Positions 9,401 through 60,188 of a stretch of 64,000 bases of DNA are shown piece by piece. Within the stretch, counting starts at the first letter, position 1. Every line of letters begins with the position of its first letter. The position numbers and the translations under genes were made by a program. The DNA lies in the IMG/VR virus record IMGVR_UViG_3300024259_002152, positions 62,001 to 126,000 of that record. One strand, given 5' to 3'. Below the pieces are notes generated by a model that saw only the letters and a program-made list of their open reading frames with translations, did no database searches and was not told the origin of the DNA.

Positions 9401-12400
9401 TGGCTTTGATTTGTCTTATACCGAGATAGTGACTGACGGGATTGCTGATATAACAATTAATGCTACTGGGTTTAGAAATAGCGGAGGAGAGGTAAGTCTA
9501 ACATCGATATTCTCAGAGTTCCCAAATGTTTTGACAGATACTATATCTTCATTGAAAGTAGATGATAATAATAATATTTGGATTTGTACTAATAGTGGTT
9601 TGTATAGGCTTTATAAGAATAAGGCATTATGTTTTACGACTTCTAATGGATTGCCTTCTAATAAAATAAATGATATAGCTGTTAGGAATACAGCGATAAG
9701 ATATATTGCTACTGCTAATGGTATAGCTAAAATGGTAGGATTTAATTTTGATAATTTTATAACATCCGAAGATGAAACTATATGGAATAATAATGTTAAA
9801 AGTATAATGTGGAAAAATCCTAATGTTTTATTAGCTGGTACTATGTCAAGATTGAATCAGATCATTATTAATGATGTTGATGAAACATATTCTACAGCAA
9901 TTTATGAACCTGCATCTTCTATTAATGTGTCTCCAGATGATTTGCAAACATATTATTTAGATAATCCTACAATTGCTGAAGATGACATTGTTGAAGTCTA
10001 TATAAATGGAAATAAAATACATTACGGATATGTTGTTAGTATTGATAAAAAAACGATAAGATTTGGAATGTCTCTTAATAATGATGATATTGTGGAAGTG
10101 GTTGCTAGGAGTGATTTAGAAGTTGTTTCTGATTTTTCCCAGACTATTGCCGAAAGAACAGATATTGGTAGCACTTTATTAAAGATTAAAGATATTGCTG
10201 TTAGGGATAATCAAGATGGAACTGGAGATGTATTTGTTATTTCGGAAGGGTCCGAGAATGAGGTAAAAATAAATGATGCTGATAGTGTTCTACCTTTTGA
10301 TAGAGTTCATCTTGATACTCATGCTCCAATTTTTTTAAACAGTGGTGAGGGAATTAAAATAGGAGAACAAATTGATAGAAGTGTTGTTCGTATTAATATC
10401 GGAGGAGCAACAGATGATGTGTTTGAGACGGAGGGTGATTCTACCACTTCTTTAGTATCAGCAGGATCTGGTATAGATAGTATGATAATATCTAATAATG
10501 AAGAATTTTTAGATAATGACGGTATTACTCCGTTGGTTGCTATTCCATTTTCTAATTCTGCGACTCATGATTTAGGTTTGTCATTAGAAAATATTGTTAA
10601 GAATCTAACTTTGACTAGCGGGGAGGGTTCAGTTATTTCATACATATCAGATGAAAATGAATTATATGTAGGAGTTTCTAAACCAGCTATTGTTTATAAA
10701 TATAATTGGGATACAGAAGTGTGGGATGAGTTGTATACTTACGATACGGACCAATATGTTGATTTTATAGAAAAATATAATAACAATCTTATGATAAGTA
10801 TAGGTCACGATACAGATCCTGCTATTATTTATACTTACACGTATAATAGTGGAACTTTGCAAGCTAATAGTGTTTTACCTTTATTTGAATCTAGAGCTTA
10901 TTCTTCTCATATTCTAGATGGTAAGTTTTATATTGGAACTGGTATAGGATCTGGAGATGAATATACTAGTGGCTCTGGATCAAGTGGAGCCATCTATTTG
11001 TTTGATGATGGAACTACGCAAGCCATAGATCCTTCTTTATCTAAAGTAGTAGATGATCTAGATGAAAATGTTTATGGTTTAACGAGTGCTTTAGGTAGTT
11101 CTAATTTGTTAGCATCAACAGGTCCGAGTGCTTATATCTATGAAGTTGATATAGAAAATCAGGCTTCATTTATTATTTATAACTCTACTGAGGCTATTGT
11201 TTCTCTAAATCATCAGGGAGATATAGGAGAAACTTTTGCTGGATCAGAAACGAGTGGAGTTATTAGAAGATCAATTACTTCTAATAATACTTATGATATA
11301 TCTTTTAGAACAACGCCTGGCAAAGTAAGTGTTTTAAAGATTTTTCCTGTTATTACGGGGATTGAAGGGGCAACGAGTTATTCTTCTACTTTTGCTGCTG
11401 TGGGTAATGTTATTTATTATTTGTCTGATGCTGGGACATGGGTATGGAAATATACCCATAACGAAATTATCAACGATATGACATTTGATAATAGATCTAT
11501 TTCTAATGTATTATATGTAATTTCTGATACTGGTGTTACAAAAATTAATCCTCTAGTTTCAGAAAAAGTTGTATACTTAAAACTGATTGATAGAGCAGGT
11601 AATGCGTCTGTTCTCGATGTTTCTCTTGAATCTGACGGGAGCGTAGATGTAGATAGTAGTAAGTTTGTGGATGGGGTTGCTATAGCAAGTTTGGTTGATT
11701 TTGTAAGTGAAAATATGATTTTTGAGTTAGACGAATTAGGAAATAATCTTTATACTTTAACTGGTGATAGTAGATTTTATTCTGCTGGAAAAATAGAAGA
11801 GGAGAAGGGAGAATATGTTAGTGAAATATTTGATGGTACAAATGATCTTGTTAAATGGGAAACTCTTTCATGGCAAGTAACAGAATTATTTGATACTCAA
11901 GTTTTGATATATGTTAGAACTTCGACATCTTCTAATGATATATTAACAGCAGCATGGCAAGGTCCGTATTCTAGTTTGCAATCTGCTGGAGTCGCTCTGA
12001 GTCATTTGCTTGGTCAATTTATACAATTTAAAGCAGTGTTAATAAGTAATGCAAAGGGTATGTCTCCTACTTTTCATAGGGCAACTATTAGAGCAATTAC
12101 AAGTGAATCGGTTCATTTCTTTACTACTAATTTTGCGATGCCAACAAAACTTAATAAAGGTATTATAACTAGTAAGAAAGTAGTCCCTGTGGCGGCAGAT
12201 GTTGTTTTCGGTCTTAATACAACGAATTCTATTGATTGGACTGAGTATCAGGAGGTTGATGAAAATAGGATATTTAATATTAATCAAACAGGTCATAATT
12301 TAAGAGTAGGGATTAAATTTATAAGTCCTAATCGTTCTACGATAGATACAACAGATTTTGGAGAATATGGTCCATATGATTCTAATTTATATGTTAATAC

Positions 12401-30505: not shown

Positions 30506-30760
30506 ATGAGGTATAAAATAGGTGATAGAATTAAAATAAGGACCTGGGAAAATATGATGAAAGAGTATGGTTCTTTTCCTGATGGAAAAGAAATTATGCT
30601 TGATAGTCCATTATATTTTGCGTCCGAGGTAGAGGAAGAAATAAATAAAAATTTCCCAGATAGAATTTTAACAGTCTTAAGCGCAGTAAGTGGGTTTTAT
30701 ACAATGGAAAAAACCATTCATGCATTCACTGATGAGATGATAGAGGGATTAGTAGAATAA
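30506..30760 (+). CDS. Small KOW/SH3-like phage protein, paralog of 52684 and 53671, without C-terminal tag
   Basis: MRYKIGDRIKIRTWENM...DRILTV...FTDEMIEGLVE aligns with MKYKVGDKVRIKIWEDM...DRILTI...WTEDMIEGIVE. Confidence 0.7.
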   Translation: MRYKIGDRIKIRTWENMMKEYGSFPDGKEIMLDSPLYFASEVEEEINKNFPDRILTVLSAVSGFYTMEKTIHAFTDEMIEGLVE

Positions 30761-30770
30761 TATTAGATTT

Positions 30771-31478
30771 ATGATTATAGATATAATATTATTAACTTAC
30801 AATAATGTAGAAAATACTAAACAATGTATAAATAATCTTTACAAATTTACTGATAATTTTGGTTTAGTTATTTTAGATAATCACTCCACAGATGGTACTG
30901 TTGATTATTTGAAAAAAATATCAGACCAAAATGATAATATAACTTTATTCCTTTCTGATCTTAATTTGGGTATTATTAATGGCAGGAATAGTGCGTACAA
31001 ATTATCAAAAGGAACTGACTATATCGTTTTTCTCGATAATGATCAATATGTTCAAAAAGATTGGTTGGATAGTTATTTAAAATTAATGATAGATAAAGAA
31101 TTTGATTTGATTGGTTGTGAAGCATGGAAAATGAGAGAAAAAGATTTTTACCCATATAAAAAAATAATAGATAACAATGACACTTTTTCCTATGTCGGCG
31201 CTGGTGGATTAATGATTAAGAATAAGATATTCGAAAAATTAGGATTATTCGATGAAGATTATGATTTTATCTATTTTGAAGATCCTAGTTTATGCTTTAA
31301 GGCACATTATCAGGGATATAAAATAGGATGGAATTATAATCCAATAATAGACCATAATCATAAGGGGGCATTGTTAAGCAATGAGAATAGGAAATATTTT
31401 CTGAACAATTGGAAAGTATTTCAGAATAAATGGCAGGGAAAAAGAATCCCTATCTTCTCAAATACTGTTGAAAAGTGA
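30771..31478 (+). CDS. Glycosyltransferase family 2
   Basis: IILLTYN, ILDNHSTDGT, NLGIINGRN, YIVFLDND (DxD), FDEDYDFIYFED. Confidence 0.9.
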   Translation: MIIDIILLTYNNVENTKQCINNLYKFTDNFGLVILDNHSTDGTVDYLKKISDQNDNITLFLSDLNLGIINGRNSAYKLSKGTDYIVFLDNDQYVQKDWLDSYLKLMIDKEFDLIGCEAWKMREKDFYPYKKIIDNNDTFSYVGAGGLMIKNKIFEKLGLFDEDYDFIYFEDPSLCFKAHYQGYKIGWNYNPIIDHNHKGALLSNENRKYFLNNWKVFQNKWQGKRIPIFSNTVEK

Positions 31479-46197: not shown

Positions 46198-46412
46198 TGG
46201 AATATAAATGTCAAACAGTTGATATGTCTCGTATGATCGTGGGTTCAATGGGCTTTTTTAGTCCTATTTGTGAAAGTTGTTCTACTCAAGATTGTAGCAA
46301 TCCTATCGAAAAAACAAAAGTTAGTATTATGGGGGTTGTAAAAGAAGTAAAGGTCTATAGTAGAGGTAGTCAATCTAGATTTGTTGTTCAATGTGAAGGA
46401 TATATGCCATAA
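46197..46412 (+). CDS. Small Cys-containing hypothetical protein
   Basis: CESC..DC motif; TAATG coupling. Confidence 0.6.
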   Translation: MEYKCQTVDMSRMIVGSMGFFSPICESCSTQDCSNPIEKTKVSIMGVVKEVKVYSRGSQSRFVVQCEGYMP

Positions 46413-47203
46413 TGTTTAAATCGATTTGTTTGTCAGAAGCTTATTTAAAAGATCATAGACTTCGTAAAGACGCTCAAAAGCAATATGAATTAACTCAGAA
46501 AAATATTCATAAAATCAAGCAAATTGCTCTTAAGATGATATCTTATCCTGAGTACCAATTGGCTTATGATTATGTTGATAATTTATTTCCCAGAGTTAAA
46601 GTAAAAGAAATTTCTATTTATAAGGTTGCAGCAAAAGATTTGGCAAAGATGGGATATTCTGGAGCAGAGGGATTTTATGATCCTGTGTCTAAGATAATTG
46701 TAGCTTGCGGTGCTCGCAAATTATCTCAACCTGTTAATAAGAAATATTATATAACAGCCAAGATAGAGAGAGATGAAGTTATTGTTCATGAATTATGTCA
46801 TTACTGTTATGTCTTTGAGGGGAAAAGATCTCTTAGTAGTGAAATCAGAGAAGAATTTGCTTATGGTTGGTCAGTTGGGTATCTCAGACAAAAAGGTTAT
46901 AGTGATGAGCAAATTGTTAGATATAATTTCTTACCGTATTTGGTGGGGTTGTCGTATGACGAGGCTATAAAAAATATATTAGTGAGAAATAATATAAGCA
47001 CTTATGCATATAATAATCATTCTCGATATCAAAGAAAAGAATTTGAGAGAACATATTTTGGTAGAATTTTTGATAGAGCTAAAGAAATAGCTATGGAGAG
47101 AGGATTGAAGTTGATTGATATTTATTCCAAAAAAATAGAAGAAGGGACAGGGTTAATAGACGAAGAAGTCGATTGTGATCGATTTGATATTTTAGATTTA
47201 TGA
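46412..47203 (+). CDS. HExxH (zincin-like) metallopeptidase with C-terminal tag (DRFDILDL)
   Basis: GAEGFYDP...VIVHELCHY...EEFAY. Confidence 0.7.
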   Translation: MFKSICLSEAYLKDHRLRKDAQKQYELTQKNIHKIKQIALKMISYPEYQLAYDYVDNLFPRVKVKEISIYKVAAKDLAKMGYSGAEGFYDPVSKIIVACGARKLSQPVNKKYYITAKIERDEVIVHELCHYCYVFEGKRSLSSEIREEFAYGWSVGYLRQKGYSDEQIVRYNFLPYLVGLSYDEAIKNILVRNNISTYAYNNHSRYQRKEFERTYFGRIFDRAKEIAMERGLKLIDIYSKKIEEGTGLIDEEVDCDRFDILDL

Positions 47204-47445
47204 AGAAACAAGTTATTGATAAAGATGATAGGATGTGGATAGGACTAGGTTTTAAGTCCTTTGCCCGATTTTTTGGTTTAAGTATCGAAGAAGCTTATAA
47301 AATCATTTCTAATCCTAATGAGGTTTTTGAAGAAATGATAGAAGAAATGGATTCTTCATTAAATGAATATGAAAATTTCATGGTTAAGACAATGAGAATG
47401 GATGAGAAAGAAGAACTGACTCGGCTTGATATTTTAGATTTATAG
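47200..47445 (+). CDS. Hypothetical protein with C-terminal tag (TRLDILDL)
   Basis: 81 aa; ATGA overlap with the upstream tag. Confidence 0.7.
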   Translation: MKKQVIDKDDRMWIGLGFKSFARFFGLSIEEAYKIISNPNEVFEEMIEEMDSSLNEYENFMVKTMRMDEKEELTRLDILDL

Positions 47446-47456
47446 GGGAAAACAAT

Positions 47457-47717
47457 ATGCCAATTTATGAGTACGAACACCCTGAGACAGGGGAGATATT
47501 TAGAGAAATAAGAAAAGTGAAAGAGAGAGATAATCCTTTTATATCTAAAGATGGAAAGATATGTAAAAGGATAACATTTCCTGGGGGAATAAAAGGTTGG
47601 AAGAAGAATAGGGAAGTTTTCGAAGCTGATCCTGCGTATGTTAAGCAGTCCAACCCCAAGTTCGTTCAATTCCAAGACGGTCATAAAGAGAGATATGACT
47701 CTACAAAACACTGTTGA
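47457..47717 (+). CDS. FmdB-family zinc-ribbon-like protein lacking most of the Cys ligands
   Basis: MPIYEYEHPETGEIF resembles MPIYEYxCxxCG of FmdB proteins. Confidence 0.65.
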   Translation: MPIYEYEHPETGEIFREIRKVKERDNPFISKDGKICKRITFPGGIKGWKKNREVFEADPAYVKQSNPKFVQFQDGHKERYDSTKHC

Positions 47718-47748
47718 AAAGTGAAAGATAAAAAGACATAATAGATGG
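47714..47748 (+). promoter_or_regulatory. Putative promoter (copy 5), ATG at predicted +1
   Basis: TTGAAAAGTGAAA at 47714, 17-nt spacer, CATAAT at 47737-42, ATG at 47749. Confidence 0.7.
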
Positions 47749-48108
47749 ATGAGATTTATACGTAAAGAGTTTATAGTTACTACTATATTTAATAAAGAAT
47801 TAACAGAGAGGGACGAAGTCCTAATCGTTTTTAACAATTTATTAAATGAGAGGATAGAGTTCGCTATGACTATGAAGAAGTATATGCCTATGCAACAAGA
47901 CTATTTCAATATGAGTTTTGAAAAAGTTAGGGTGAAGAGAATCAACGATGATGATACTGTTGATTTGTTAGCTTTCAAGAGTGGGGTTAAAACTAACATA
48001 AAGGGGGTTCCTTTTGATCATATCATAGAAGTAAATGCGACTACTAAAAAACATAAAATTTTAGATATTGACTCCGATTTAAATCGTTTTGATATATTAG
48101 ACTTGTAA
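47749..48108 (+). CDS. Hypothetical protein with C-terminal tag (NRFDILDL)
   Basis: 119 aa. Confidence 0.7.
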   Translation: MRFIRKEFIVTTIFNKELTERDEVLIVFNNLLNERIEFAMTMKKYMPMQQDYFNMSFEKVRVKRINDDDTVDLLAFKSGVKTNIKGVPFDHIIEVNATTKKHKILDIDSDLNRFDILDL

Positions 48109-48815
48109 TGACAGAAGAAGTAAAAAAAGAAGTAAAAGAATTAATAGATCAATATAAATTAGATTGTTCTATTGAAGAGTTTAAAAACAAAGCAAATTGG
48201 GAAAAAATTTCTCATTATGACTTCCTTTCAGAAGATTTTATTAGAGAATTTCAAGATGAAGTACATTGGGAATATCTTTGTTTTTATCAACTATTGCCAG
48301 AAGACTTTATTAGAGAATTTAAAGACGAGGTACATTGGGATAATGTTTTTATATGTCAAAAAATATCAGAGAATTTTATTAGAGAATTTAAGGATAAAGC
48401 AAGTTGGAGAGAAATTTCTTATTATCAAGAATTATCAGAGAATTTTATTAGAGAATTTAAAGATGAAGTAAATTGGAACAATATTTGTCAGAAACAAAAG
48501 TTATCAGAGAATTTTATTAGAGAATTTCAGGATAGGGTAAATTGGCATTGGACTCCCTTTTATCAAACCTTATCAGAAGATTTTATTAGAGAGTTTCAAG
48601 ATAAAGTAGATTGGGTGGCTGTATCTTTTTGTCAAGTATTATCAGAAGATTTTATCAGGGATTTTAGAGACAAGATTTCTTTAGGGTATTTATCGAGTAA
48701 TCAAAAAATAAATGTCTCAGAAGAATTTCGAAAAGGAATAAAAAATGGAAAAATATTACCTCCTCCAATAAAACCATTTTCTTTTGGTAATAGAGTAGAA
48801 ATGTTGGACTTATAA
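48108..48815 (+). CDS. 23-aa tryptophan-repeat protein (7 repeats) with C-terminal tag (NRVEMLDL)
   Basis: W-x6-Q-x-LSE[D/N]FIREF-x-D-x-V-x repeated; tag at 48792-48815. Confidence 0.85.
   Translation: MTEEVKKEVKELIDQYKLDCSIEEFKNKANWEKISHYDFLSEDFIREFQDEVHWEYLCFYQLLPEDFIREFKDEVHWDNVFICQKISENFIREFKDKASWREISYYQELSENFIREFKDEVNWNNICQKQKLSENFIREFQDRVNWHWTPFYQTLSEDFIREFQDKVDWVAVSFCQVLSEDFIRDFRDKISLGYLSSNQKINVSEEFRKGIKNGKILPPPIKPFSFGNRVEMLDL
48198..48680 (+). repeat. Seven imperfect 69-bp tandem repeats (core TCAGA[A/G][G/A]ATTTTATTAGAGAATTT)
   Basis: Visible in DNA and in protein; first Trp codon at 48198. Confidence 0.85.
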
Positions 48816-49162
48816 TGTATAGAGTTGTAGTATTAAAAGAGAAAGATAATAGTTGTTCAGGTTGTTTTGGAAAATCACTTGGATTCTGCTCGAGTTATCA
48901 GTGCCTTACAGGAAATACCTCTTCTGATAGGTCCACTACTGCTTGTATTAATAAAAACAAAGATATTAATAGATATGTCCAGGGTTTTTTGAGATCAAAA
49001 GCACAAGTCCTAAATGACTATAATAGCACAGAAGAAGTTATTAATTCGTTCATAAGATATCTAGAAAATATTGGTAGTACAGATGATGATGCTATTATTG
49101 TAGAAGAAAAGGAAGAAAAAGAAGAAATTATTGAAGACAGATTCGAAATGTTGGATTTGTAA
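48815..49162 (+). CDS. Cys-cluster hypothetical protein with C-terminal tag (IEDRFEMLDL)
   Basis: CSGC...C...C...C; 115 aa. Confidence 0.7.
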   Translation: MYRVVVLKEKDNSCSGCFGKSLGFCSSYQCLTGNTSSDRSTTACINKNKDINRYVQGFLRSKAQVLNDYNSTEEVINSFIRYLENIGSTDDDAIIVEEKEEKEEIIEDRFEMLDL

Positions 49163-49650
49163 TGACAGAAAAAGTAAAAAAAGAAGTAGAAGAAATAATA
49201 AAAGAATATAAATCACAAGTTTCTGTTAGTTATATTCGGGCATTTGAAGATCAGAAATTTGAAAGTCAGGCATTTTGGCAGTCTATTTCTCAATTCCAAA
49301 TTTTATCAGAAGATTTTATTAGAGAATTTCAAGATAAAGTATGGTGGTATGCTATTTCTTGGCATCAAAAATTATTAGAAGATTTTATTAGGGAATTTAA
49401 AGATGAAATAAATTGGTATCAAATTTTTTTACATCAAAAATTATCAGAAGGTTTTATTAGGGAGATTACTGAGAACTTGAAAGACGACAAGAAGTTTTAT
49501 TATGAAGAAAATTTAAGATGTTTACTTAGAAACAAAAATATACCAAATCAAATAAGAAAAGAGATAAATAATTATGGAAAAATATTACCTCCTCGTGGTC
49601 CAATAAAATTATTTTCTTTTAGTGATAGAGCAGAAATGTTGGACTTATGA
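49162..49650 (+). CDS. Tryptophan-repeat protein paralog (3 repeats) with tag (DRAEMLDL)
   Basis: Shares N-terminus MTExVKKEV and C-terminal GKILPP...FSF with 48108. Confidence 0.8.
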   Translation: MTEKVKKEVEEIIKEYKSQVSVSYIRAFEDQKFESQAFWQSISQFQILSEDFIREFQDKVWWYAISWHQKLLEDFIREFKDEINWYQIFLHQKLSEGFIREITENLKDDKKFYYEENLRCLLRNKNIPNQIRKEINNYGKILPPRGPIKLFSFSDRAEMLDL

Positions 49651-50165
49651 CAGAAGAATTAAAAAAAGAAATAGAAGAAATAATAAGAATTGAGAATCTT
49701 AGTTGTTCTGTAGAAGAATTTATTATAGAGGCAAATGATCCTATTTATAGAATTCCCATAGAAGAAGTTCCTTCTATGGAGGGGAAGAAAAGGGTGTGTA
49801 TAAAAACTACTCTGTGGAGTAGAATTTGTCAACATTGTAGTTTATCAGAAGATTTGATGAGAGAATTTATTGAATTACTTCATTGGCCTGGTGTATCTTG
49901 TCATCAAAAATTATCAATAGAATTTGTTAGAGAGTTTAAACACAAAATTCATTGGTATTGGCATACTCATAGAACAGATTTGTCTTATGATTTTATTTTA
50001 GAATTTGAAAAATATTTAGATTGGGAATATTTGATGAAAAAGAAATATTATATATCTGATAATCAAGGTTTTTTTAATGGTGATTTAGATTTTTCTTTAG
50101 AAGAATATAAAAGATTTAAAGAAGAAAATAAAATTCATAGTAGATTTGGTATTTTGGACTTATGA
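49647..50165 (+). CDS. Divergent tryptophan-repeat protein (3 repeats) with tag (SRFGILDL)
   Basis: WSRICQHCSLSEDLMREF, WPGVSCHQKLSIEFVREF, WYWHTHRTDLSYDFILEF. Confidence 0.75.
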   Translation: MTEELKKEIEEIIRIENLSCSVEEFIIEANDPIYRIPIEEVPSMEGKKRVCIKTTLWSRICQHCSLSEDLMREFIELLHWPGVSCHQKLSIEFVREFKHKIHWYWHTHRTDLSYDFILEFEKYLDWEYLMKKKYYISDNQGFFNGDLDFSLEEYKRFKEENKIHSRFGILDL

Positions 50166-50189: not shown

Positions 50190-51605
50190 ATGAAATACAA
50201 TAATAAAGATTTTGTTCACTTTCACACACATTCGGAATTTAGTCAGTTTGACGGTTTGGCCAAGGTAGATGATCTTGTTCTTCAAGCTCGAAAGATGGGA
50301 TTTCCATCATTAGCACTTACGGACCATGGATCGGTTATGGGCTGGGTTAAATTTCTCCAGGCAGCAAGAGCTACTAAGGACAAAAAAGGGAAAGATATTC
50401 CTTACGCTCCTATTAAACCTATCCTTGGTTGTGAATTTTATCTGGCTCGAAAAATGAGTATAGGTCAAAATGAGGAGAAAAGAGATACTGATCTTATAAA
50501 AAAATGGCAGCCCGATGGGAGAAGAGGAAATAGACATTTGAATCTCTATGCTATGAATTTTGAAGGATATAAGAATGTATGTCGTATGTCCCAAAGGTCT
50601 TTTACCGAGGGTTTTTATTATGATGCACGTATCGATATTGATTTAATATCAAAACACTCTAAAGGAGTAATGTGTGGTTCAGCATGTCTATCTAGCGTTA
50701 TTAACGCTAATTTAATGTATGGTCGTTACAACCAAGCTAAACAGGTTTGTGGTGTTTTGAATGAGATATTTGATGGTAATTTTTTTCTAGAAATAATGTA
50801 TCATGGGATTAGGGAAGAAAGAGAAATTATTCCTTTAATCTTAAAATTATCATCAGAATTAGATATTCCTGTAGTTGCTACGAATGATTCTCACTACATT
50901 TATAAGGATCAAGGAGAATCTCAAGAAGTCCTATTGTGTATGTCTCAGCAAAGATGTGTTAAAGATCCAAAGAGATTAAAATTTGGTCATATGGAGTTCT
51001 ATCTAAAAAGTGCAGAAGAAATGGGCAGGATGTTTGGGCATATCCCTCATAGTTTGACTAATTCTGTTGCTCTTGCGGAGAGAATTAATACTAAAGATAT
51101 AGAAGATAACCTTTTTGGGGGCATGAGACTGCCAAAGTTCGATATACCTGAAAAGTATAAAAGTCCTTATGATTATTTATCTGATTTAGCATGGCAAGGC
51201 ATGAAAAGAATAGGTTGGGATCAGAGTAAAGAGCATGTTGAAGCACTAAAAAAAGAGTTAGAAGATGTTCTGGTCGCTCAAGAAAATAATAATTATGATT
51301 TCTCAACTTATTTTCTAATTGTTCGTGATTACATTCTTGACGCAAAGGAAAAGGGTGTTTTGGTGGGTTGCGGTAGAGGGAGTGGTTATGCTAGTGTGCT
51401 ATTAAGATGTATTGAAATTACTTATGGAGTTGATCCATTAAAATATGGACTTCTTTGGGAAAGGTTTTTAGGATTTGATTCTAAGAAGTTTATTAAAGAG
51501 TCAGATTTCGGCTTTGAAGAAGATTTGGTGCAGGCGGCGGCAGATAAAGATTTAGGAGGAGATAGAGAGTTAGAAGATGATTTGGGAGGGGTAGATAGAT
51601 ATTAA
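50190..51605 (+). CDS. dnaE: DNA polymerase III alpha, N-terminal fragment (PHP domain to ERFL)
   Basis: FVHFHTHSEFSQFDG, LTDHG, PILGCEFY, ATNDSHY, YFLIVRDYI, VGCGRGS, DPLKYGLLWERFL, then an acidic tail and stop. Confidence 0.93.
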   Translation: MKYNNKDFVHFHTHSEFSQFDGLAKVDDLVLQARKMGFPSLALTDHGSVMGWVKFLQAARATKDKKGKDIPYAPIKPILGCEFYLARKMSIGQNEEKRDTDLIKKWQPDGRRGNRHLNLYAMNFEGYKNVCRMSQRSFTEGFYYDARIDIDLISKHSKGVMCGSACLSSVINANLMYGRYNQAKQVCGVLNEIFDGNFFLEIMYHGIREEREIIPLILKLSSELDIPVVATNDSHYIYKDQGESQEVLLCMSQQRCVKDPKRLKFGHMEFYLKSAEEMGRMFGHIPHSLTNSVALAERINTKDIEDNLFGGMRLPKFDIPEKYKSPYDYLSDLAWQGMKRIGWDQSKEHVEALKKELEDVLVAQENNNYDFSTYFLIVRDYILDAKEKGVLVGCGRGSGYASVLLRCIEITYGVDPLKYGLLWERFLGFDSKKFIKESDFGFEEDLVQAAADKDLGGDRELEDDLGGVDRY

Positions 51606-51619
51606 AGATTGGAAAAATA

Positions 51620-51880
51620 ATGACAGACAAAAAAGAAAAATTTAATATAGGGTGGGGAGACAGACGGGTAGGAGTTATTGGAAAAGATGGAGAAATGATA
51701 GGCAATTTTGTTGTTTTTGACCCCAAAACAAGAATGTTGAAATCTGTTGATGAAAAAGGAGAAGTAGTAAATTTAATTATGGATGCCGATTGTAGGACAT
51801 GGATTCCAGAAGAAATAGAGAAAAAAGAAACAGAAGAGGATATAGGGATAGAGAATCGTTCAGATATTTTGGATATTTGA
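51620..51880 (+). CDS. Hypothetical protein with tag (IENRSDILDI)
   Basis: 86 aa. Confidence 0.7.
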   Translation: MTDKKEKFNIGWGDRRVGVIGKDGEMIGNFVVFDPKTRMLKSVDEKGEVVNLIMDADCRTWIPEEIEKKETEEDIGIENRSDILDI

Positions 51881-51997
51881 AGAAAGTAGATAGATATTAG
51901 TGCAGAGAAGAAAGAGATAATATATCTAAACTTTAGTAATGAATGTTCTATTTGGAAGATTAGTTCTATCATTAACAAAAGGGATGTGAAACATTTT

Positions 51998-52153
51998 ATG
52001 ATAGATGATAATAAATGTTTTGTTATAGGGTGTCTTGGTGTTAATGAAGAAGCATATGTAGGAGAATATGTGTTTTTCAGAGATTTTAATCATTGTCTGA
52101 GGTTTAAAAAAATAGAAGCAATTCATGATAGATTTGAGATAATGGACTTATAG
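51998..52153 (+). CDS. Small ORF missed by the track, with tag (MIDDNKCF...IHDRFEIMDL); frame is open back to 51890
   Basis: Hand translation: 51 aa from ATG 51998; no stop between 51890 and TAG 52151-53. Confidence 0.65.
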   Translation: MIDDNKCFVIGCLGVNEEAYVGEYVFFRDFNHCLRFKKIEAIHDRFEIMDL

Positions 52154-52162
52154 GAGAAAAAA

Positions 52163-52687
52163 ATGAAGAGATCGTGTCATATTTGCAAACATGGTGTTAT
52201 AGTTGAATATAAATATGAAGATGATTATGACGAGGACTATATTTTTAAAGGATCGGTTATATTTTGTATTGCAAATCCTCCTCTTTTTGTAGGGGATGAT
52301 GATCATCGTTTTGGGAATGATCTTCAGATCGTAGAAGGAGAAAAGGAGATAAAGGAATATTGTTATTATCCTGTTGTTTATAGAAATGATAATGAGAATA
52401 TAGAAGAAGATGATGAAGATGATGAATATTATGGTAATGGAGAGATAAGTGTTGCTCCTTGTTCTCTTTATTGTGAATCGGCCACTAATAAAACTAAATA
52501 TACGAAGAAATTGGAGAAAATAGAAAAAGAAAAGCAAGAGCAAATAAAAAAAGCAGAAACTAAGAAGAAAGCAGAAGCCAAGAAAAAAGCCGATAAGTTA
52601 CAACGTAAAAAAAATAATAAAAAACGGAAACTAAAAGAGCAAGAAGAAATGAAATTAAAAAACAGATTTGAAATATTGGATATATGA
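52163..52687 (+). CDS. Cys-containing protein with Lys-rich coiled coil and tag (NRFEILDI)
   Basis: CHIC..., KKAE repeats; AGGAG RBS overlaps the preceding stop. Confidence 0.7.
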   Translation: MKRSCHICKHGVIVEYKYEDDYDEDYIFKGSVIFCIANPPLFVGDDDHRFGNDLQIVEGEKEIKEYCYYPVVYRNDNENIEEDDEDDEYYGNGEISVAPCSLYCESATNKTKYTKKLEKIEKEKQEQIKKAETKKKAEAKKKADKLQRKKNNKKRKLKEQEEMKLKNRFEILDI

Positions 52688-53010
52688 AATACAAAGTAGG
52701 AGATAAAGTAAGGATTAAGATATGGGAAGACATGTTAATAGAGTTGTGTAATTATTGGGAGACTCTAGAACAGGCAAGAAACCGTCTTGAGGATCAACAT
52801 ATCTGTCTTGAAAAGGAACTTAACAAGGTAAATGTTGATAGGATTTTGACTATTGAAAGTATAGAAAAACGTGAAGGTTATTATTGTTATCGTACAAAGG
52901 AGAAAGGTTGGGAATGGACTGAGGATATGATAGAAGGGATAGTAGAAGACGTGATAGAGGACCGAATTGAGGATAGAATAGAAAGTAGATTTGAGATATT
53001 GGATATATGA
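52684..53010 (+). CDS. KOW/SH3-like small protein with tag (IEDRIEDRIESRFEILDI)
   Basis: Paralog of 30506 and 53671. Confidence 0.75.
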   Translation: MKYKVGDKVRIKIWEDMLIELCNYWETLEQARNRLEDQHICLEKELNKVNVDRILTIESIEKREGYYCYRTKEKGWEWTEDMIEGIVEDVIEDRIEDRIESRFEILDI

Positions 53011-53402
53011 AATTTATAGAAGTAATAGATTATAATAAGTCATATCCTCAAGGTATTTTTGTAAAAATTCCTATCAAAGATATAAAGAAATTTCATAAGG
53101 TTGAAAAATATACTAGATATTATATAGATTTAGATGATTCAGAACGTTTGTTAAAACGTAAGTATAAAGAACACCTTGGTAATCACATGTTTATCGAGAA
53201 ATCTGAAAATGGTCAATATTATAGTGCTGGGATTATGATTAATCATAAAACACAGATACAATGCCAATCGTCATGTGGTGGTAGTATATATTTTTATTTT
53301 TCAGATTTGGATTATGAAGAATTTGAGGGAGAAGCTCGGTTGTATGATTTGTCGTTACATATTGCCGATATTAATTATAGATTTGAGATATTGGATATAT
53401 AA
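53007..53402 (+). CDS. Hypothetical protein with tag (DINYRFEILDI)
   Basis: 131 aa; ATGA overlap. Confidence 0.7.
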   Translation: MKFIEVIDYNKSYPQGIFVKIPIKDIKKFHKVEKYTRYYIDLDDSERLLKRKYKEHLGNHMFIEKSENGQYYSAGIMINHKTQIQCQSSCGGSIYFYFSDLDYEEFEGEARLYDLSLHIADINYRFEILDI

Positions 53403-53404
53403 AA

Positions 53405-53671
53405 GTGACAGATAAAGAATTTTTACAGATGGTGAGAAATTCATTTGCTCAGGTTCGTAATAAGGGTAATTTGCCTACTGGTCCTGAGCTAATTGAATCA
53501 TTATTATCAGTTCAACCTATGACTGATGAATTAGTTGCAGAGGGATATACTAATGAATTAATAAAATTAGGAAGTTCTAATTTGCAGCGTAAAAAAGTTA
53601 TTATTACAGCATATATGGATATTAATTATAGATTTGAAATATTGGATATACAAAAACAGGAGATAAAGTAA
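53405..53671 (+). CDS. Hypothetical protein; tag extended by QKQEIK
   Basis: GTG start; ...RFEILDI then CAA where sister copies have TAA/TGA/TAG. Confidence 0.65.
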   Translation: MTDKEFLQMVRNSFAQVRNKGNLPTGPELIESLLSVQPMTDELVAEGYTNELIKLGSSNLQRKKVIITAYMDINYRFEILDIQKQEIK

Positions 53672-53940
53672 TGAAATATAAAACAGGAGATAAAGTAAGG
53701 ATAAAGACAAAGGGTCAGATGGAGAAAGAATTTGGCTATTATGACGAAGAAAGCAAATTCATAAATTGTGATCAACATTTTTCTTCTATTATGGAAGAGG
53801 CACTGAATCGGCTAGATAGTGATAGAATTCTTACTATTAATCATTTAGAATATTTTCAAAATGTTAATTATTATTACATGAGGGAAATAGAGGGATTTTG
53901 GACTGATGATATGATAGATGAGTTAGTAAATGATAAATAG
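53671..53940 (+). CDS. KOW/SH3-like small protein; tag lies just downstream in the +1 frame (possible frameshift)
   Basis: MKYKTGDKVRIK...; 53930-53962 reads MINRFEILDI* in the +1 frame. Confidence 0.7.
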   Translation: MKYKTGDKVRIKTKGQMEKEFGYYDEESKFINCDQHFSSIMEEALNRLDSDRILTINHLEYFQNVNYYYMREIEGFWTDDMIDELVNDK

Positions 53941-53971
53941 ATTTGAGATATTGGATATATAGGAATAAAAG

Positions 53972-54505
53972 ATGAGTGAAGTAAGTAAATTATCAGAAGA
54001 AGATCTTAAAAAAATAGCGGATATGATGGTTGATCAGGCAGTAGTGCCGTCTCCTAAAGCAATTATTAAAATAGAAAATGAGACTGTTCCTGAAACTGAT
54101 ACAATTAAAAGATATAAAAGGTCTAATAAACAATTACGGACAAAAGTAGAAAGACAGATTAGCGAAATAGCCAAACAGGAAGCAGAGATAAAAGAGTTGC
54201 AGGTAAGTGCTTATCTTAATACGGATGAGGCTAAAGATACGATCAATAAAAAATTAAGAGAAGAAAAACAAGCATTAAAGCTAAAAATGGAAGAGCAGGG
54301 ATTAAATTTTGAAAAAGAGCGCAAAGAAATAATAGAGACAAGAAGTAAGATTTATGAGTTAGAACGAACAATAGGGAGTAATAAGAAAGAGATTGAGGGG
54401 CTAAGAACAGAAGTGGATCAATTAATGAATGATAATAGAGAACTTCAAGCAGAGATAGATGCTAGAATTAAAGCAGATGGTAGATTTAATATAATGGATT
54501 TATAA
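53972..54505 (+). CDS. Coiled-coil protein with tag (GRFNIMDL)
   Basis: 177 aa, heptad-rich. Confidence 0.75.
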   Translation: MSEVSKLSEEDLKKIADMMVDQAVVPSPKAIIKIENETVPETDTIKRYKRSNKQLRTKVERQISEIAKQEAEIKELQVSAYLNTDEAKDTINKKLREEKQALKLKMEEQGLNFEKERKEIIETRSKIYELERTIGSNKKEIEGLRTEVDQLMNDNRELQAEIDARIKADGRFNIMDL

Positions 54506-54506
54506 T

Positions 54507-54541
54507 TTGCAAAGTGAAAGTTTTGAAAATATATTTAGAGA
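54507..54541 (+). promoter_or_regulatory. Putative promoter (copy 6) for DnaE C-fragment, ATG at predicted +1
   Basis: TTGCAAAGTGAAA at 54507, 17-nt spacer, TATATT at 54530-35, ATG at 54542. Confidence 0.7.
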
Positions 54542-56515
54542 ATGGCAGATTTAGCAGATATTAAAAAAGAGATAATAGGATATATCACTAAAAAGCACTC
54601 CAAGAGCGATAAATTACCAAAAATTATTTCTAAAGTGAAAGAAGAACTCGATGTTTTAGAATCGACTGACGGTTTAGAAGGCAAGAATAATTTAGAAGTA
54701 TTTTATAATACATGGAAGAGCCACAAGGGAGAGGTGGGTCATAAAAATGACATTAATAGTTGGGCTGCTTTCTTCCTGGGGATAACGGAAGTAAAACCTG
54801 ATGGAGATTTTCTTCCGACTAGGCGTGCTTTTGCTAGGGCGGGATTCCCTGATATTGACACTGATTTTGATTACGAGAATAGGGATACTGTTTATTCTTA
54901 TATAATTGATAAGTATGGAAGAGAGAATGTAGGGAATATTGGCACTCACGGATTATTGAAATTTAAATCATGTGTGACCAGGGTGACTAAAGCTTTAGAT
55001 CTAGCAAATGCTTATCACAAAGGTAGTGATGCTTTTGTTAGCGAAAATGCTGCTAAGGTAACAGAAATTTTATCTCCTTTTCCGAAAATGGGACTAGTGA
55101 AAGTTACTGACGATGATGGTGAAAGTTACCTTATAAAAACTTTCCAAGATGCTTATGATCATTGTCCAGATTTTAGACATTATGTTGACAAATATGAGAG
55201 TAGTCATTTCAAAGAATATATGGAGCATATAGAAGGGACATTTGCTAATTTCGGCTGCCATGCTGCAGGAATAGTTGTTTCTGATATTCCTCTTGATGAA
55301 ATTGCTCCTTTGAGAAATGCTAAAAAGGGAGTTCTTGCCACTCAATTCCCTAATGAAGATTTGGAATCAATAGGTCTTATTAAATTTGATGATCTTGCTC
55401 TTTCTACTTTATCCATTGTGAAAAAAACAGTAAAAATGGTAAAAGAACATTGGGGAATAGAAGTAGATCTAGAAAATCTGCCTATGGAAGATGATGCTAC
55501 TTTCGAATTATATCGTAGAGGAAATTTGGGTGGAGTTTTTCAGTGTGAAAATAGTGGCATGCAAAAAACTATGAGAGATATAGGAGTAGATCGTTTTGAA
55601 GATATTATAGCGGGACTAGCTCTTTATCGTCCTGGACCTATGGATAGTATTCCTGAGTATTGTGCAAGAAAGCATGAAGAAAATGAAATTAGTTACTTTC
55701 ATAGGTCAATTGAGCCATTTGTAAAATCTTATTTAGAAAGCACATATGGAATCTTATGTTATCAAGAGCAAGTTATGCAGATTTGTAATAGTCTTGCAGG
55801 TTTTACTATTACTGATGGCTACATAATGATTAAGTCGATTGGTAAGAAAAAAGAATACTTAATGAAGCGTTTTGAAGAACAATTTATTTTAGGTTGTGAA
55901 AGAAATAAAGTGCCGTCAGATGTTGCTAAGCAATATTGGGATAAATTTATAGTTCCTTTCTCTGGTTATGGGTTTAATTTGGCTCATAGTGCTTGTTATG
56001 GTTATAATTCTTACACTACAGCATATCTAAAAGCTAATTATCCTGATGAATTTATATGTTCTTTATTAGATGTGACGATAAATAGTTCTCAGGGTGAAAG
56101 GTATGATAAAGTTTCAGCATTTGAGAGGGAATTTAAAAGAAAGATGGGTGTTAAATTTCTTCCCAGAGATATAAATAAGTGTAAAGTATCATTTACTATC
56201 GAAAAAAGAAAAGATCTTGCAGAAGGTGTAAAAAAAACAGAAATACGTCCTAGTCTTTTATGTAAAGGGCTTTTAACTAAATCTGCCAAGAACATAGAAG
56301 AAAATCAACCTTATGAAGATATGAGAGATATAGTTAGAAAAACTGATTCTTCGTTAGTTGATACTAGGGTTATAGACGCTTTGGCTACAGGGGGATATTT
56401 AGGTAAAAAGCATATAGAAGACTCTTCTGTTATAGTAAAAGATTTTGTCATGATCAGAGAGGATATGAAAAAAACTGCTAAAAGAGGGGTAGAAACTATT
56501 GATATATTTGGTTAA
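54542..56515 (+). CDS. dnaE: DNA polymerase III alpha, C-terminal fragment (catalytic Asp residues, fingers, HhH)
   Basis: GFPDIDTDF, YIIDKYG, GCHAAGIVVS, GLIKFDDLAL, GVFQCE, LALYRPGPM, TYGILCYQEQVMQI, YGFNLAHS, LKANYP. Confidence 0.93.
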   Translation: MADLADIKKEIIGYITKKHSKSDKLPKIISKVKEELDVLESTDGLEGKNNLEVFYNTWKSHKGEVGHKNDINSWAAFFLGITEVKPDGDFLPTRRAFARAGFPDIDTDFDYENRDTVYSYIIDKYGRENVGNIGTHGLLKFKSCVTRVTKALDLANAYHKGSDAFVSENAAKVTEILSPFPKMGLVKVTDDDGESYLIKTFQDAYDHCPDFRHYVDKYESSHFKEYMEHIEGTFANFGCHAAGIVVSDIPLDEIAPLRNAKKGVLATQFPNEDLESIGLIKFDDLALSTLSIVKKTVKMVKEHWGIEVDLENLPMEDDATFELYRRGNLGGVFQCENSGMQKTMRDIGVDRFEDIIAGLALYRPGPMDSIPEYCARKHEENEISYFHRSIEPFVKSYLESTYGILCYQEQVMQICNSLAGFTITDGYIMIKSIGKKKEYLMKRFEEQFILGCERNKVPSDVAKQYWDKFIVPFSGYGFNLAHSACYGYNSYTTAYLKANYPDEFICSLLDVTINSSQGERYDKVSAFEREFKRKMGVKFLPRDINKCKVSFTIEKRKDLAEGVKKTEIRPSLLCKGLLTKSAKNIEENQPYEDMRDIVRKTDSSLVDTRVIDALATGGYLGKKHIEDSSVIVKDFVMIREDMKKTAKRGVETIDIFG

Positions 56516-59057: not shown

Positions 59058-60188
59058 ATGGCAAAAAGTAAAAGTAATAAAGCGAATGAAGATGAACTTT
59101 TTAAAAACCTAGGAGGTTTTTGTCAGATGGGAGCCAGGGCATCGAGCCCTGGTAACATCCCTACAGGTCATTTTAATTTGGATTTTATTATCCAGTATGG
59201 TCAAGATCCTACCAAAGTGGATTTGAATAGTCTCGAAGGATATGATCCTAAGACTGCTCTTGGAATACCATTAGGAAAATTGGTTGAAATATTTGGAGAA
59301 GAAGGTAGTGGCAAATCATCCTTAGCGTATCGTATTGCAGGCTATGCTCAAAAGATGGGATACAAGACTGCATGGATTGATGTTGAGCATTCTTTTCAAG
59401 AAAATTTAGCATATATTAATGGTTGTGATATTGATAAGTTGATTTATTCCAATATGGTAAATCATGAAAATCCTGATGATGATTATTATGCGGAAGATGT
59501 GATCGATGCTATGCAGCTAATGATGAAAAATGGAGTTCAAGTTATAGTTTTGGACTCTGTTGCTAATTTGATTCCTAAAAGTTTGTTCGAGGCAGCAACT
59601 GAAAAAGAGTTTATGGGGTTGCTGTCAAGATTGTTGAGTAAATCTTTAGGTAAATTAGTTTCTTATGCTGAGAAATATGGAGCATTGCTTGTTTTTATTA
59701 ATCAGTTAAGAGAAAAAATAGGACAAACTTGGGGAGACCCAAGAACAAGTCCAGGTGGTCATTCTTTACATCATAATGCCTCTTTGCGTTTGCGAATGGA
59801 TAAACGAAATGCTAAAGAGGCAGACATCTTTGTTCCAGATCCTGAAACGGGCGAGGATATGTTGATAGGTAGACATTCTAAGGTAGCTCTGATTAAGAAT
59901 AGATTTGCTAAACCGTATAGGGAGTCTCTTGATGTGCCCATTTATTACGAGGCTTATTTTCCAGAGATAGATGATATCGCTTTCGATACGGGTAGACAGA
60001 TAAAACTTATTTCAGTTAGGAAAGGAATCTTTAGTTGGGGTGAGTTAAAAATAGAAGGAAGAAAAGCTTTTATTGATCATATTATAAAAAATAAGCTTAC
60101 AGATAAACTTATTGAAGCAATAAGAGTCAAAGCTTCTGAAAAAGATCTTATCCTGCCTCCCGAGATTGTCCTATATGGATCAGAGTAA
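59058..60188 (+). CDS. recA: RecA/UvsX recombinase (track start 59025; ATG 59058 more likely)
   Basis: IPTG..NLD, GKLVEIFGEEGSGKS, WIDVEH, VIVLDSVANL, FINQLREKIG, SPGGHSLHHNASLRL, KNRFAKPYR. Confidence 0.92.
   Translation: MAKSKSNKANEDELFKNLGGFCQMGARASSPGNIPTGHFNLDFIIQYGQDPTKVDLNSLEGYDPKTALGIPLGKLVEIFGEEGSGKSSLAYRIAGYAQKMGYKTAWIDVEHSFQENLAYINGCDIDKLIYSNMVNHENPDDDYYAEDVIDAMQLMMKNGVQVIVLDSVANLIPKSLFEAATEKEFMGLLSRLLSKSLGKLVSYAEKYGALLVFINQLREKIGQTWGDPRTSPGGHSLHHNASLRLRMDKRNAKEADIFVPDPETGEDMLIGRHSKVALIKNRFAKPYRESLDVPIYYEAYFPEIDDIAFDTGRQIKLISVRKGIFSWGELKIEGRKAFIDHIIKNKLTDKLIEAIRVKASEKDLILPPEIVLYGSE

What the first reader, a model, noticed from the sequence alone, without database searches (positions are those of the whole stretch)
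52127..53962. Tag copies between the DnaE halves are nearly identical in DNA and form the gene junctions: cassette-like array
Seen in sequence: copies ending at 52687, 53010, 53402, 53650 and 53962 read AGATTTGA[G/A]ATATTGGATATA. Two share 33 bp with one mismatch (53367-53399 and 53618-53650, GATATTAATTATAGATTTGA[G/A]ATATTGGATATA) although the genes upstream are unrelated. The last tag codon plus stop often creates the next start (TTATGA, ATATGA, TAATG at 47200, 48108, 48815, 49162, 49647, 52684, 53007). Inference: the tag DNA may double as a microhomology for RecA/UvsX-driven insertion and shuffling of genes, so each new gene arrives tagged and translationally coupled, an integrase-free cassette array.
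Basis: partly seen in the sequence, partly recalled or inferred. Interest (0 to 1): 0.65.

Follow-up and report, generated by a model that had tools for sequence, protein, structure and literature searches.

The report
Tag-coding repeats at phage gene junctions
In a 351-kb marine phage, a run of small genes wedged between the two halves of its DNA polymerase gene all end in the same seven-residue tail, and the near-identical DNA for that tail at every gene junction appears to act as a hotspot where genes are swapped, much as promoter repeats do in T4-like phages.

Summary
Five exact 21-nt copies (AGATTTGARATATTGGATATA) lie at 52664, 52987, 53379, 53630 and 53939. There is also a 33-nt pair with one mismatch, and the stop/start overlaps are as described.

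The motif is first of all a protein tag, R-F-[DE]-I-L-D-[LI]. It ends about 37-40 ORFs across the 350,866-bp genome, all on the + strand. Its codons vary synonymously, and it is kept as a peptide in orthologues of related huge phages.

At the DNA level, neighbouring tags are more alike than distant ones (permutation p<0.0002). Tags group by location, not by gene family, which indicates concerted evolution.

The array sits at an ancient DnaE split site. Relatives hold 0-9 different tagged ORFs there, in different orders.

Two natural mosaic variants of this otherwise near-clonal phage have edges at tags (L097 at 52664-52684; L134 at G000 12958). A RecA-family gene lies 3 kb downstream of the DnaE C-half.

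The cassette-shuffling reading is therefore partly supported. It is an analogue of PeSL-mediated shuffling in T4-type phages, with a coding repeat. It is not proven: whole-gene selection could give the same edges, and one insertion is flanked by a non-tag repeat. The tag's own function is unknown.

The parts
50190..51605 (+). DnaE N-terminal half (PHP domain plus the start of the pol III alpha domain). It ends in GGVDRY*, a tail conserved in relatives.
   Evidence: Pfam PF02811 at 1.2e-41 and PF07733 at 3.1e-19. The same split is seen in relatives.
51591..51604 (+). First copy of the 14-nt direct repeat GTAGATAGATATTA, at the 3' end of DnaE-N. The second copy is at 51886-51899. The two copies bracket the first array gene.
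   Evidence: (family D8).
51620..51880 (+). Array gene 1 (86 aa), with tag RSDILDI at 51857-51877. L035 has a homologue, but placed directly before DnaE-C.
51986..52153 (+). Array gene 2 (51-55 aa), with tag RFEIMDL at 52130-52150.
52163..52687 (+). Array gene 3 (174 aa, Lys-rich), with tag copy 1 at 52664-52684 (GAA variant). In variant contig L097 a different tagged gene stands here, and two runs' contigs break at this junction.
52684..53010 (+). Gene P1 (108 aa), a member of a dispersed family whose proteins begin MKYKxGDKVRIK. Tag copy 2 is at 52987-53007. Its ATGA start overlaps the preceding stop.
53007..53402 (+). Gene X (131 aa, no homologue in the loci held). Tag copy 3 is at 53379-53399, and the 33-nt shared block is at 53367-53399.
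53405..53671 (+). Gene Y (88 aa). Tag copy 4 is at 53630-53650 and the 33-nt shared block at 53618-53650. The stop codon is replaced by CAA, giving 6 extra residues. A 19-nt duplication of the P2 5' end lies at 53653-53671 and 53680-53698.
53671..53940 (+). Gene P2 (89 aa), a paralogue of P1 at 41% amino-acid identity. It ends untagged at a TAG codon.
53939..53962 (+). Tag copy 5 plus stop. It is +1 out of frame with P2, with only 3 open codons upstream in its own frame, so it is an untranslated relic.
   Evidence: Independent assemblies are identical here.
53972..54505 (+). Last array gene (177 aa, sequence suggests a coiled coil; not tested), with tag RFNIMDL at 54482-54502. Orthologues in at least 8 relatives sit next to DnaE-C.
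54542..56515 (+). DnaE C-terminal half (rest of the pol III alpha domain, fingers, HhH).
   Evidence: Pfam PF17657 at 1.7e-48, PF07733 at 1.6e-30, PF14579 at 1.7e-8.
46412..50165 (+). Upstream array: seven tagged genes plus untagged 47457-47717. The first four genes (46412-48108, including 47457-47717) are conserved in relatives. The last four are variable and share the local EMLDL/…LDL tag variants.
59256..59948 (+). RecA-family recombinase gene (the match lies within a 387-aa open frame), a candidate enzyme for the recombination.
   Evidence: PF00154 at E 6.5e-45, 150.7 bits.

Best explanation
The region is part of a hyperplastic, co-directional array of small ORFan genes. No excess of promoter-like or terminator-like sites was found, which is compatible with co-transcription. 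The array sits at an ancient split site in the DnaE gene of a huge marine phage.

Each gene ends in a protein-level C-terminal tag, I-x-[NSD]-R-F-[DE]-I-L-D-[LI]. The same tag is carried by about 37-40 proteins of the genome. It is presumably a short docking or address peptide for a common partner; that function is inferred, not shown.

The tag lies at the very 3' end of each gene, and genes abut or overlap through ATGA or TAATG. Every junction therefore carries a 21-33-nt near-identical direct repeat. These repeats are islands of identity in otherwise unrelated or diverged DNA.

The proposed consequence is that the phage's RecA-family recombination, or replication slippage, tends to resolve within them. 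The observed results would be:
- Concerted evolution of neighbouring tags.
- Gain, loss, replacement and reordering of whole tagged genes.
- Scars, such as the 33-nt DINY+tag copy, the 19-nt duplication, and the lost stop and frameshifted relic around P2.

This works like PeSL-mediated modular shuffling in T4-type phages, but the repeat is coding. A gene moved in this way keeps a tag and its translational coupling.

Shown: the tag is a peptide motif, tags are locally homogenised, array content varies, two mosaic edges lie at tags, and a recombinase gene is present. Inferred: that the crossovers happen in the tag DNA, and what the tag does.
For: 1. Protein-level tag.
- 37 ORFs of at least 30 aa, all on the + strand, end in the motif.
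- Codons vary synonymously across the genome: CGT/AGA/AGG, ATA/ATT, TTA/TTG.
- Orthologues in relatives keep the peptide with other codons and with lineage-wide variants: RW.. in L023/L025..LMD. in L024/L002.
- The extended consensus has Ile at -3 in 25 of 37 tags.

2. Local homogenisation.
- Tags within 1.5 kb share synonymous codons 0.71 of the time, against 0.56 for distant tags. None of 5,000 permutations reached this.
- Without the five-copy cluster the figures are 0.64 against 0.55, p=0.008.
- The same weak trend holds in nine related loci, p=0.02-0.04.
- P1 and P2 are only 41% identical, as far from each other as from paralogues elsewhere in the genome. Yet they carry their neighbours' tag version, not their paralogues'.
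- Other clusters have their own variants (G000 11891/12498/12958; window 48792/49139/49627), and these include non-paralogous genes.

3. Variable array.
- The DnaE N/C gap is 5 to about 3,080 nt in the 21 relatives compared, and 2,940 nt here, with different tagged ORFs.
- L035 has P, P, an IREF-repeat gene, a 53972-like gene and then a 51620-like gene before DnaE-C, a different order from this window.
- DNA similarity to relatives inside the array is nearly confined to short tag-centred stretches, apart from one 66-70% stretch in the last gene 53972-54505 (L040, L027).

4. Mosaic edges among near-identical strains.
- L097 matches window 52681-54362 without a mismatch, but has a different tagged gene upstream.
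- A Logan contig shows the same junction (record 29).
- Contigs of two further runs end at 52711 and start at 52686.
- L134 has 14 SNPs packed into G000 12893-12953, ending 5 nt before the tag, with 555 and 635 identical nt on either side.
- So 2 of 3 edges lie within 5 nt of a tag, while tags with a 5-nt margin cover about 3% of the roughly 31 kb surveyed. My rough binomial p is about 0.003.

5. Machinery and exclusions.
- A RecA-family gene lies at window 59256-59948.
- There is no promoter or terminator enrichment.
- There are no inverted repeats at the junctions.
- No integrase-like domain is found in the array ORFs.
Against: - Only two mosaic variants were found in about 60 near-identical contigs. 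An edge marks where homology ends, not where the crossover took place.
- In L097 the two alternative tags differ at 4 of 21 bases, with a longest shared block of about 5 nt. That is weak homology for a RecA-type enzyme.
- The left edge of the L097 replacement could not be recovered.
- Because genes abut, any whole-gene indel that survives selection must end at or next to a tag.
- The first array gene is bracketed by a 14-nt repeat of the DnaE-N end, not by tags.
- Most tag codons are the genome's preferred ones (AGA, TTT, GAT), so tags resemble each other anyway.
- 21-33 nt is much shorter than the roughly 100-nt PeSLs.
Confidence: 0.55

Rival explanations
1. The tag DNA plays no part in recombination. 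Tags look alike because of purifying selection on the peptide, strong codon bias and some recent local duplication. Indels end at tags only because genes abut and only whole-gene changes survive. The array is an ordinary phage hyperplastic region built by illegitimate recombination at random microhomologies.
For: - AGA, TTT and GAT are the preferred codons.
- The insertion of gene 51620-51880 is flanked by a 14-nt non-tag repeat.
- The two alternative tags in L097 share only short blocks.
- The population is nearly clonal, so few events can be seen.
Against: - Synonymous codon choice clusters by position (p<0.0002; p=0.008 without the main cluster).
- P1/P2 and the R family carry their neighbours' tag versions rather than their paralogues'.
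- The unusual DINY pre-tag, with identical codons, is shared by two unrelated adjacent genes.
- The L134 patch ends 5 nt before the tag starts.
Confidence: 0.28
2. The 21-mer is mainly a DNA or RNA signal, and the peptide is incidental. Candidate signals are a ribosome-loading or coupling element for the next gene, an RNase site, or a promoter/terminator as in PeSLs.
For: - The copy at 53939 is kept 21/21 although it is out of frame, and a second out-of-frame relic follows P5 at G000 92506-92760.
- About a third to a half of tags overlap the next start codon.
Against: - All 37 tags are in frame at C-termini on one strand.
- Synonymous sites vary freely between arrays and between orthologues.
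- Relatives keep the peptide with other codons and with extra residues after it.
- There is no excess of promoter-like or terminator-like sites.
- The TTG/TTA choice is unrelated to an overlapping downstream start (odds ratio 1.03, p=1.0).
Confidence: 0.05
3. An integron-like, site-specific cassette system. A dedicated recombinase recognises the repeat as an att site.
For: Co-directional cassettes of single small genes, with no excess of promoter-like sites, each ending in a conserved repeat.
Against: - No integrase or transposase domain is found in the array ORFs.
- The repeat is not an imperfect palindrome, and no inverted repeats lie at the junctions.
- The repeat is translated and is spread over many arrays across 351 kb.
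Confidence: 0.03

Closest known systems
PeSL (promoter-early stem-loop) mediated modular shuffling in hyperplastic regions of T4-type phages (Arbiol et al. 2010, PMC2839356; Comeau et al. 2014, PMC4122927)
   Same: - Short conserved repeats flank small ORFan genes in hyperplastic regions between conserved core genes.
- Differences between relatives are whole-gene insertions, deletions and replacements next to the repeats.
- The moved gene brings its own expression signal with it.
- The phage has a RecA/UvsX-type recombinase.
   Different: - Here the repeat is coding: it encodes the last 7-11 codons of each gene, not a promoter plus terminator.
- It is 21-33 nt, not about 100 nt.
- No promoter or terminator signal is found.
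- What travels with the gene is a peptide tag and a stop/start overlap.
- Mini-circles were not tested.
- The phage is not T4-like in the sense that it uses a split DnaE polymerase.
Internal proteins (Ip) of T-even phages
   Same: Many diverse, non-essential small proteins share one short terminal signal peptide, and related phages encode different sets of them (PMC12373910).
   Different: - The Ip signal is N-terminal and directs packaging into the capsid. Here the tag is C-terminal and its role is unknown.
- There are about 40 carriers here, against 3 to about 10 Ips.
- That recombination in the signal-coding DNA swaps ip genes is my recollection of Repoila et al. 1994. I did not check it here.
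Integron gene cassettes
   Same: Co-directional single-gene units, with no excess of promoter-like sites in the array, each ending in a repeat.
   Different: There is no integrase, no attC-type palindrome, and the repeat is translated.
C-terminal clamp-binding peptides (bacterial QL[SD]LF; RB69 polymerase tail)
   Same: A polar-hydrophobic-acidic-hydrophobic-hydrophobic pattern at or near a C-terminus. This resemblance is from memory only.
   Different: - The invariant Arg and Asp of the tag are not features of clamp motifs.
- No clamp gene was found in the genome with two Pfam families.
- The complex test with the E. coli clamp gave no verdict.

Membership tests
PeSL-type modular shuffling | Conserved short repeats flank ORFans in hyperplastic regions between conserved core genes | tested here: met
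   A tag lies at every junction of the array between the DnaE halves, and the same holds in other arrays. Content is variable in relatives.
PeSL-type modular shuffling | The repeat is a sigma-70-like early promoter plus a stem-loop terminator | tested here: not met
   48 promoter-like sites against 56 expected, and 5 terminator-like sites against 2.7 expected, none at tags. No inverted repeats at the junctions. The repeat is in-frame coding sequence.
PeSL-type modular shuffling | Indel or replacement breakpoints between close relatives map to the repeats | tested here: inconclusive
   Two mosaic variants have an edge at a tag (L097; L134). There are only two events, the other edge of L097 is unknown, and one insertion is flanked by a non-tag repeat.
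PeSL-type modular shuffling | Excised mini-circles carrying one chimeric repeat | not testable with these tools
   The runs are held only as contigs at a depth of about 4.
Integron cassette array | Adjacent tyrosine-recombinase integrase and an attI site | tested here: not met
   No such Pfam domain is found in the ten ORFs from 50190 to 56515. The whole genome was not scanned for integrases.
Integron cassette array | attC sites: imperfect inverted repeats that fold as hairpins | tested here: not met
   Five short inverted repeats were found in 51600-54550, none at a tag or junction.
T-even internal-protein-like signal peptide family | Diverse small proteins share one short terminal peptide | tested here: met
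   37 ORFs of at least 30 aa with unrelated bodies end in the tag.
T-even internal-protein-like signal peptide family | The peptide directs packaging into the capsid and is removed by the prohead protease | not testable with these tools
   No virion proteome or host is available.
Beta-clamp-binding motif | The peptide docks in the clamp's hydrophobic pocket | tested here: inconclusive
   The complex test with the E. coli clamp scored 0.03, which gives no verdict. No clamp gene was found.

The most novel reading that the evidence does not exclude
The tag-coding 21-33-mer is a true portable recombination site. On this reading, a proteome-wide C-terminal address peptide has DNA that lets RecA-type recombination capture, tag, translationally couple and shuffle ORFan genes. 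This would happen between arrays and between co-infecting huge phages. It would be an integrase-free counterpart of integron cassettes, in which the targeting signal propagates itself.
Probability: 0.3. Interest if true: 0.8.

Novelty: new variant of a known kind. Interest (0 to 1): 0.6.

Why it matters
Huge phages carry hundreds of small ORFan genes, and how these are gained and lost is poorly understood.

Here one short sequence would explain two things at once. It would explain how about a tenth of the proteome is addressed to a common partner. It would also explain how the genes for it are exchanged as ready-to-use units.

This would extend the PeSL idea, in which repeats guide recombination to acceptable sites, from regulatory DNA to coding DNA. 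It also points to a clade-wide peptide tag, seen in contigs from about 50 to 550 kb. No paper in the library searched contains its sequence.

Tried and rejected
- **Phage collection, DNA search.** Megablast of 50190-56515 against the phage collection found no match. The protein-mode search found only distant DnaE at no more than 35% identity.
- **Paper search.** Searching for the tag peptide strings found nothing for the 6- and 7-residue forms. A search for papers on conserved C-terminal motifs in jumbo phages found nothing relevant.
- **Read laying.** 5,501 letters on four runs showed the same strain at a depth of about 4. The listed joints had short sides (20-23 nt) and are uninformative. 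Only record 29 of X8 was useful.
- **The alternative gene in L097.** I could not recover more of it. The protein word search was blank. An exact DNA pattern search in viral contigs was blank. The records behind the metagenome loci are not held.
- **Further look-ups.** Eight of the ten look-ups in near-identical contigs showed only the same gene order.
- **Clamp hypothesis for the tag.** No beta-clamp domain 3 or gp45 family was found in the genome. Complex prediction of a tag-bearing tail with the E. coli beta clamp scored 0.03, which is no verdict and no evidence either way.
- **Pfam on tagged proteins.** Ten tagged proteins gave only DUF4116 repeats in one of them.
- **Codon choice and coupling.** The idea that TTG rather than TTA supplies a Shine-Dalgarno-like GG for coupled starts was rejected.
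- **Programmed frameshifting.** I considered this for the two out-of-frame relics and rejected it, because the shifts go in different directions.
Full report
**1. Setting**

The window is bases 62001-126000 of a single 350,866-bp contig with 33% G+C. The contig is held as a virus record, estimated 73% complete. It is found in many seawater metagenomes. No close relative exists in the GenBank phage collection.

The finding lies between two ORFs that together make a DnaE-type polymerase. The N-half (50190-51605) has a PHP domain and the start of the pol III alpha domain. The C-half (54542-56515) has the rest of that domain, the fingers and an HhH motif.

**2. The observation**

Five exact copies of AGATTTGARATATTGGATATA lie at 52664, 52987, 53379, 53630 and 53939. 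With two looser copies there are 7 matches, against 0.06 expected.

The 33-nt blocks 53367-53399 and 53618-53650 differ at one base. The two proteins concerned share only their last 11 residues.

The listed ATGA and TAATG overlaps are real.

The 53630 copy is followed by CAA, not a stop. The 53939 copy is +1 out of frame with ORF 53671-53940. Independent assemblies from other samples are identical at both places, so neither is an assembly error.

**3. What the motif is**

Thirty-seven ORFs of at least 30 aa, all on the + strand and spread over seven or so clusters of the genome, end in R-x-x-[ILMV]-[ILMV]-D-[ILMV]. Mostly this reads RF[ED]ILDL. The consensus extends upstream, with Ile at -3 in 25 of 37 tags and N, S or D at -1 in 30 of 37.

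Across the genome the codons vary synonymously: CGT/AGA/AGG/CGA, ATA/ATT, TTA/TTG/CTT, GAT/GAC.

Related phage contigs have DnaE 47-82% identical to this one. They carry the same peptide on orthologous genes with other codons, sometimes followed by a few acidic or basic residues. They also show lineage-wide variants: RW..LDL in L023/L025, RF.LMD. in L024/L002..LDLRR in L027. A 548-kb IMG/VR contig has eight consecutive small ORFs with the tag.

The motif is therefore a peptide tag under selection, not a DNA signal. Three further results agree with this:
- There is no excess of promoter-like or terminator-like sites.
- There are no inverted repeats at the junctions.
- Codon choice is unrelated to overlapping downstream starts.

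Tagged proteins have almost no known domains. What the tag binds is unknown. A clamp-binding idea could not be tested to a verdict.

**4. DNA-level pattern**

Although tags vary between arrays, neighbours are alike. Pairs within 1.5 kb share synonymous codons 0.71 of the time, against 0.56 for distant pairs, and none of 5,000 permutations reached this. Without the five-copy cluster the values are 0.64 against 0.55, p=0.008. Nine related loci show the same weak trend, p=0.02-0.04.

The five copies here are the only tags ending in Ile (ATA). By genome codon usage, identity of five such tags has a probability of about 1e-7.

Tags follow location, not ancestry. P1 (52684) and P2 (53671) are only 41% identical. 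That is as far apart as each is from the paralogues at G000 137797, 254365 and 92506. Yet P1 and P2 carry the local tag version, while the paralogues carry theirs.

The same holds elsewhere. The 'EMLDL' cluster at 48792/49139/49627 includes the unrelated gene 48815-49162. Three tags at G000 11891/12498/12958 are identical to each other.

The unusual pre-tag DINY, with identical codons, is shared by the unrelated neighbours X and Y.

This is concerted evolution. It requires copying between neighbouring tags, by conversion, unequal crossing-over or reuse of a resident tag.

**5. Relatives**

The DnaE split is shared by the whole clade, and the N-half usually ends in GGVDRY*. The gap between the halves ranges from 5 nt (L043, L046: the ORFs abut) to about 3,080 nt. 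It holds 0-9 ORFs, mostly small and tagged, and mostly not homologous between relatives.

Only the last gene (53972-54505) is widely shared. L035 has a different order, with the 51620-like gene placed last.

At the DNA level, similarity to relatives inside the array is confined mainly to short tag-centred stretches. The exception is one 66-70% stretch in the last gene (L040, L027). The DnaE halves align at 72-79%.

Array content is thus not fixed, so the first refutation criterion fails.

**6. Breakpoints in near-identical strains**

Ten exact-protein look-ups gave about 60 contigs from other samples, nearly all 100% identical and collinear with this genome (alignments). Two are mosaics.

*L097.* This contig is identical to the window from 52681 to 54362. 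Upstream of that point it has a different gene, ending ...IDRLEILDI. Its tag differs from the window's at 4 of 21 bases. A Logan contig of run X8 shows the same junction. In two other runs the contigs end at 52711 and start at 52686, as expected at a branch in the assembly graph.

*L134.* This contig has 14 substitutions packed into G000 12893-12953, the 20 codons before a tag. The sequence on either side is identical for 555 and 635 nt. The patch comes from a diverged allele, and the tag is the first long identical block after it. The right-hand crossover therefore most likely lay in the tag.

Two of three edges lie within 5 nt of a tag. Tags with a 5-nt margin cover about 3% of the roughly 31 kb surveyed, which gives a rough p of 0.003.

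There are caveats. Only two events were seen. An edge shows where homology ends, not where the exchange happened. And whole-gene selection would also place edges at gene ends.

One insertion argues for other microhomologies. Gene 51620-51880 is bracketed by a 14-nt repeat of the DnaE-N end. By my estimate the chance of that is about 6e-4, given its position.

**7. Mechanism**

A RecA-family gene lies 3 kb downstream of the DnaE C-half.

The most economical reading has three steps. First, the tag is a peptide signal. Second, its coding DNA forms direct repeats at every junction. Third, recombination or slippage between these repeats homogenises them and moves whole tagged genes.

The closest described system is PeSL-mediated modular shuffling in T4-type phages. 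This array fails that family's defining feature, since the repeat is not a promoter/terminator. It is therefore an analogue, not a member. It is not integron-like either.

The T-even internal proteins are a functional parallel for a shared terminal signal on diverse small proteins.

**8. Verdict**

This is a new variant of a known kind.

Noticed in passing
window 51591-51604 and 51886-51899: An exact 14-nt direct repeat (GTAGATAGATATTA) of the DnaE-N 3' end brackets the first array gene. It looks like the footprint of an insertion by short homology that did not use the tag.
   Followed up: partly
window 53939-53962; window 30506-30775 (G000 92506-92775): Two members of the MKYKxGDKVRIK family (P2 and P5) end just before an out-of-frame tag relic. 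P2 is shifted +1 in an A-run. P5 has a 2-nt insertion and a shortened tag. These look like tags lost through small indels.
   Followed up: partly
window 53650-53698: Gene Y has CAA where the tag's stop codon should be. It is followed by a 19-nt duplicate of the 5' end of P2 (53653-53671 and 53680-53698). This looks like a recombination scar at the junction.
   Followed up: partly
L002, L003, L032-L035, L039, L040, L043, L044, L046, L047, L050, L051, L053, L055: In relatives the DnaE C-half is interrupted again, near residues 201-241 and near residue 481 of the query. At the first site the two pieces often overlap by 19-77 residues. ORFs of about 330 aa ending ..YGIKKGFFEE recur there. These may be inteins, homing-endonuclease insertions or further splits.
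   Followed up: no
window 56500-56515 and the ends of DnaE-C in L001-L046: The DnaE C-half ends in a conserved tail, G-V-E-[ST]-x-D-[IML]-F-[GAS]. From memory this resembles the QADMF clamp-binding motif of E. coli pol III alpha. It differs from the RFEILDL tag.
   Followed up: no
L023, L025, L024, L002, L027, L043: Whole lineages carry their own tag variant on many different genes: RW..LDL, RF.LMD., and ..LDL followed by RR. This suggests either co-evolution with one receptor or genome-wide homogenisation.
   Followed up: partly
L014 (IMG/VR contig of 547,943 bp), reverse strand, first 2 kb of the locus: Eight consecutive ORFs of 59-113 aa all end in the tag. A run of four have the ..DI ending. 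The tag system therefore extends to much larger phage genomes.
   Followed up: partly
window 48108-50165; G000 10587-11057 and 11937-12521: A tagged multigene family with tandem repeats of about 23 residues (..LSEDFIREFxDKVxW..) is spread over two arrays. Three independent assemblies start at window 49442, inside one member. That may mark a repeat or a polymorphism.
   Followed up: no
L121 5686-6798 (G000 136685-137800): The largest tagged protein (371 aa) consists of DUF4116 repeats (Pfam E 2.5e-51). It is the only tagged protein with a clear domain match.
   Followed up: no
window 59256-59948: A RecA-family recombinase gene (PF00154, E 6.5e-45) lies 3 kb downstream of the DnaE C-half.
   Followed up: partly
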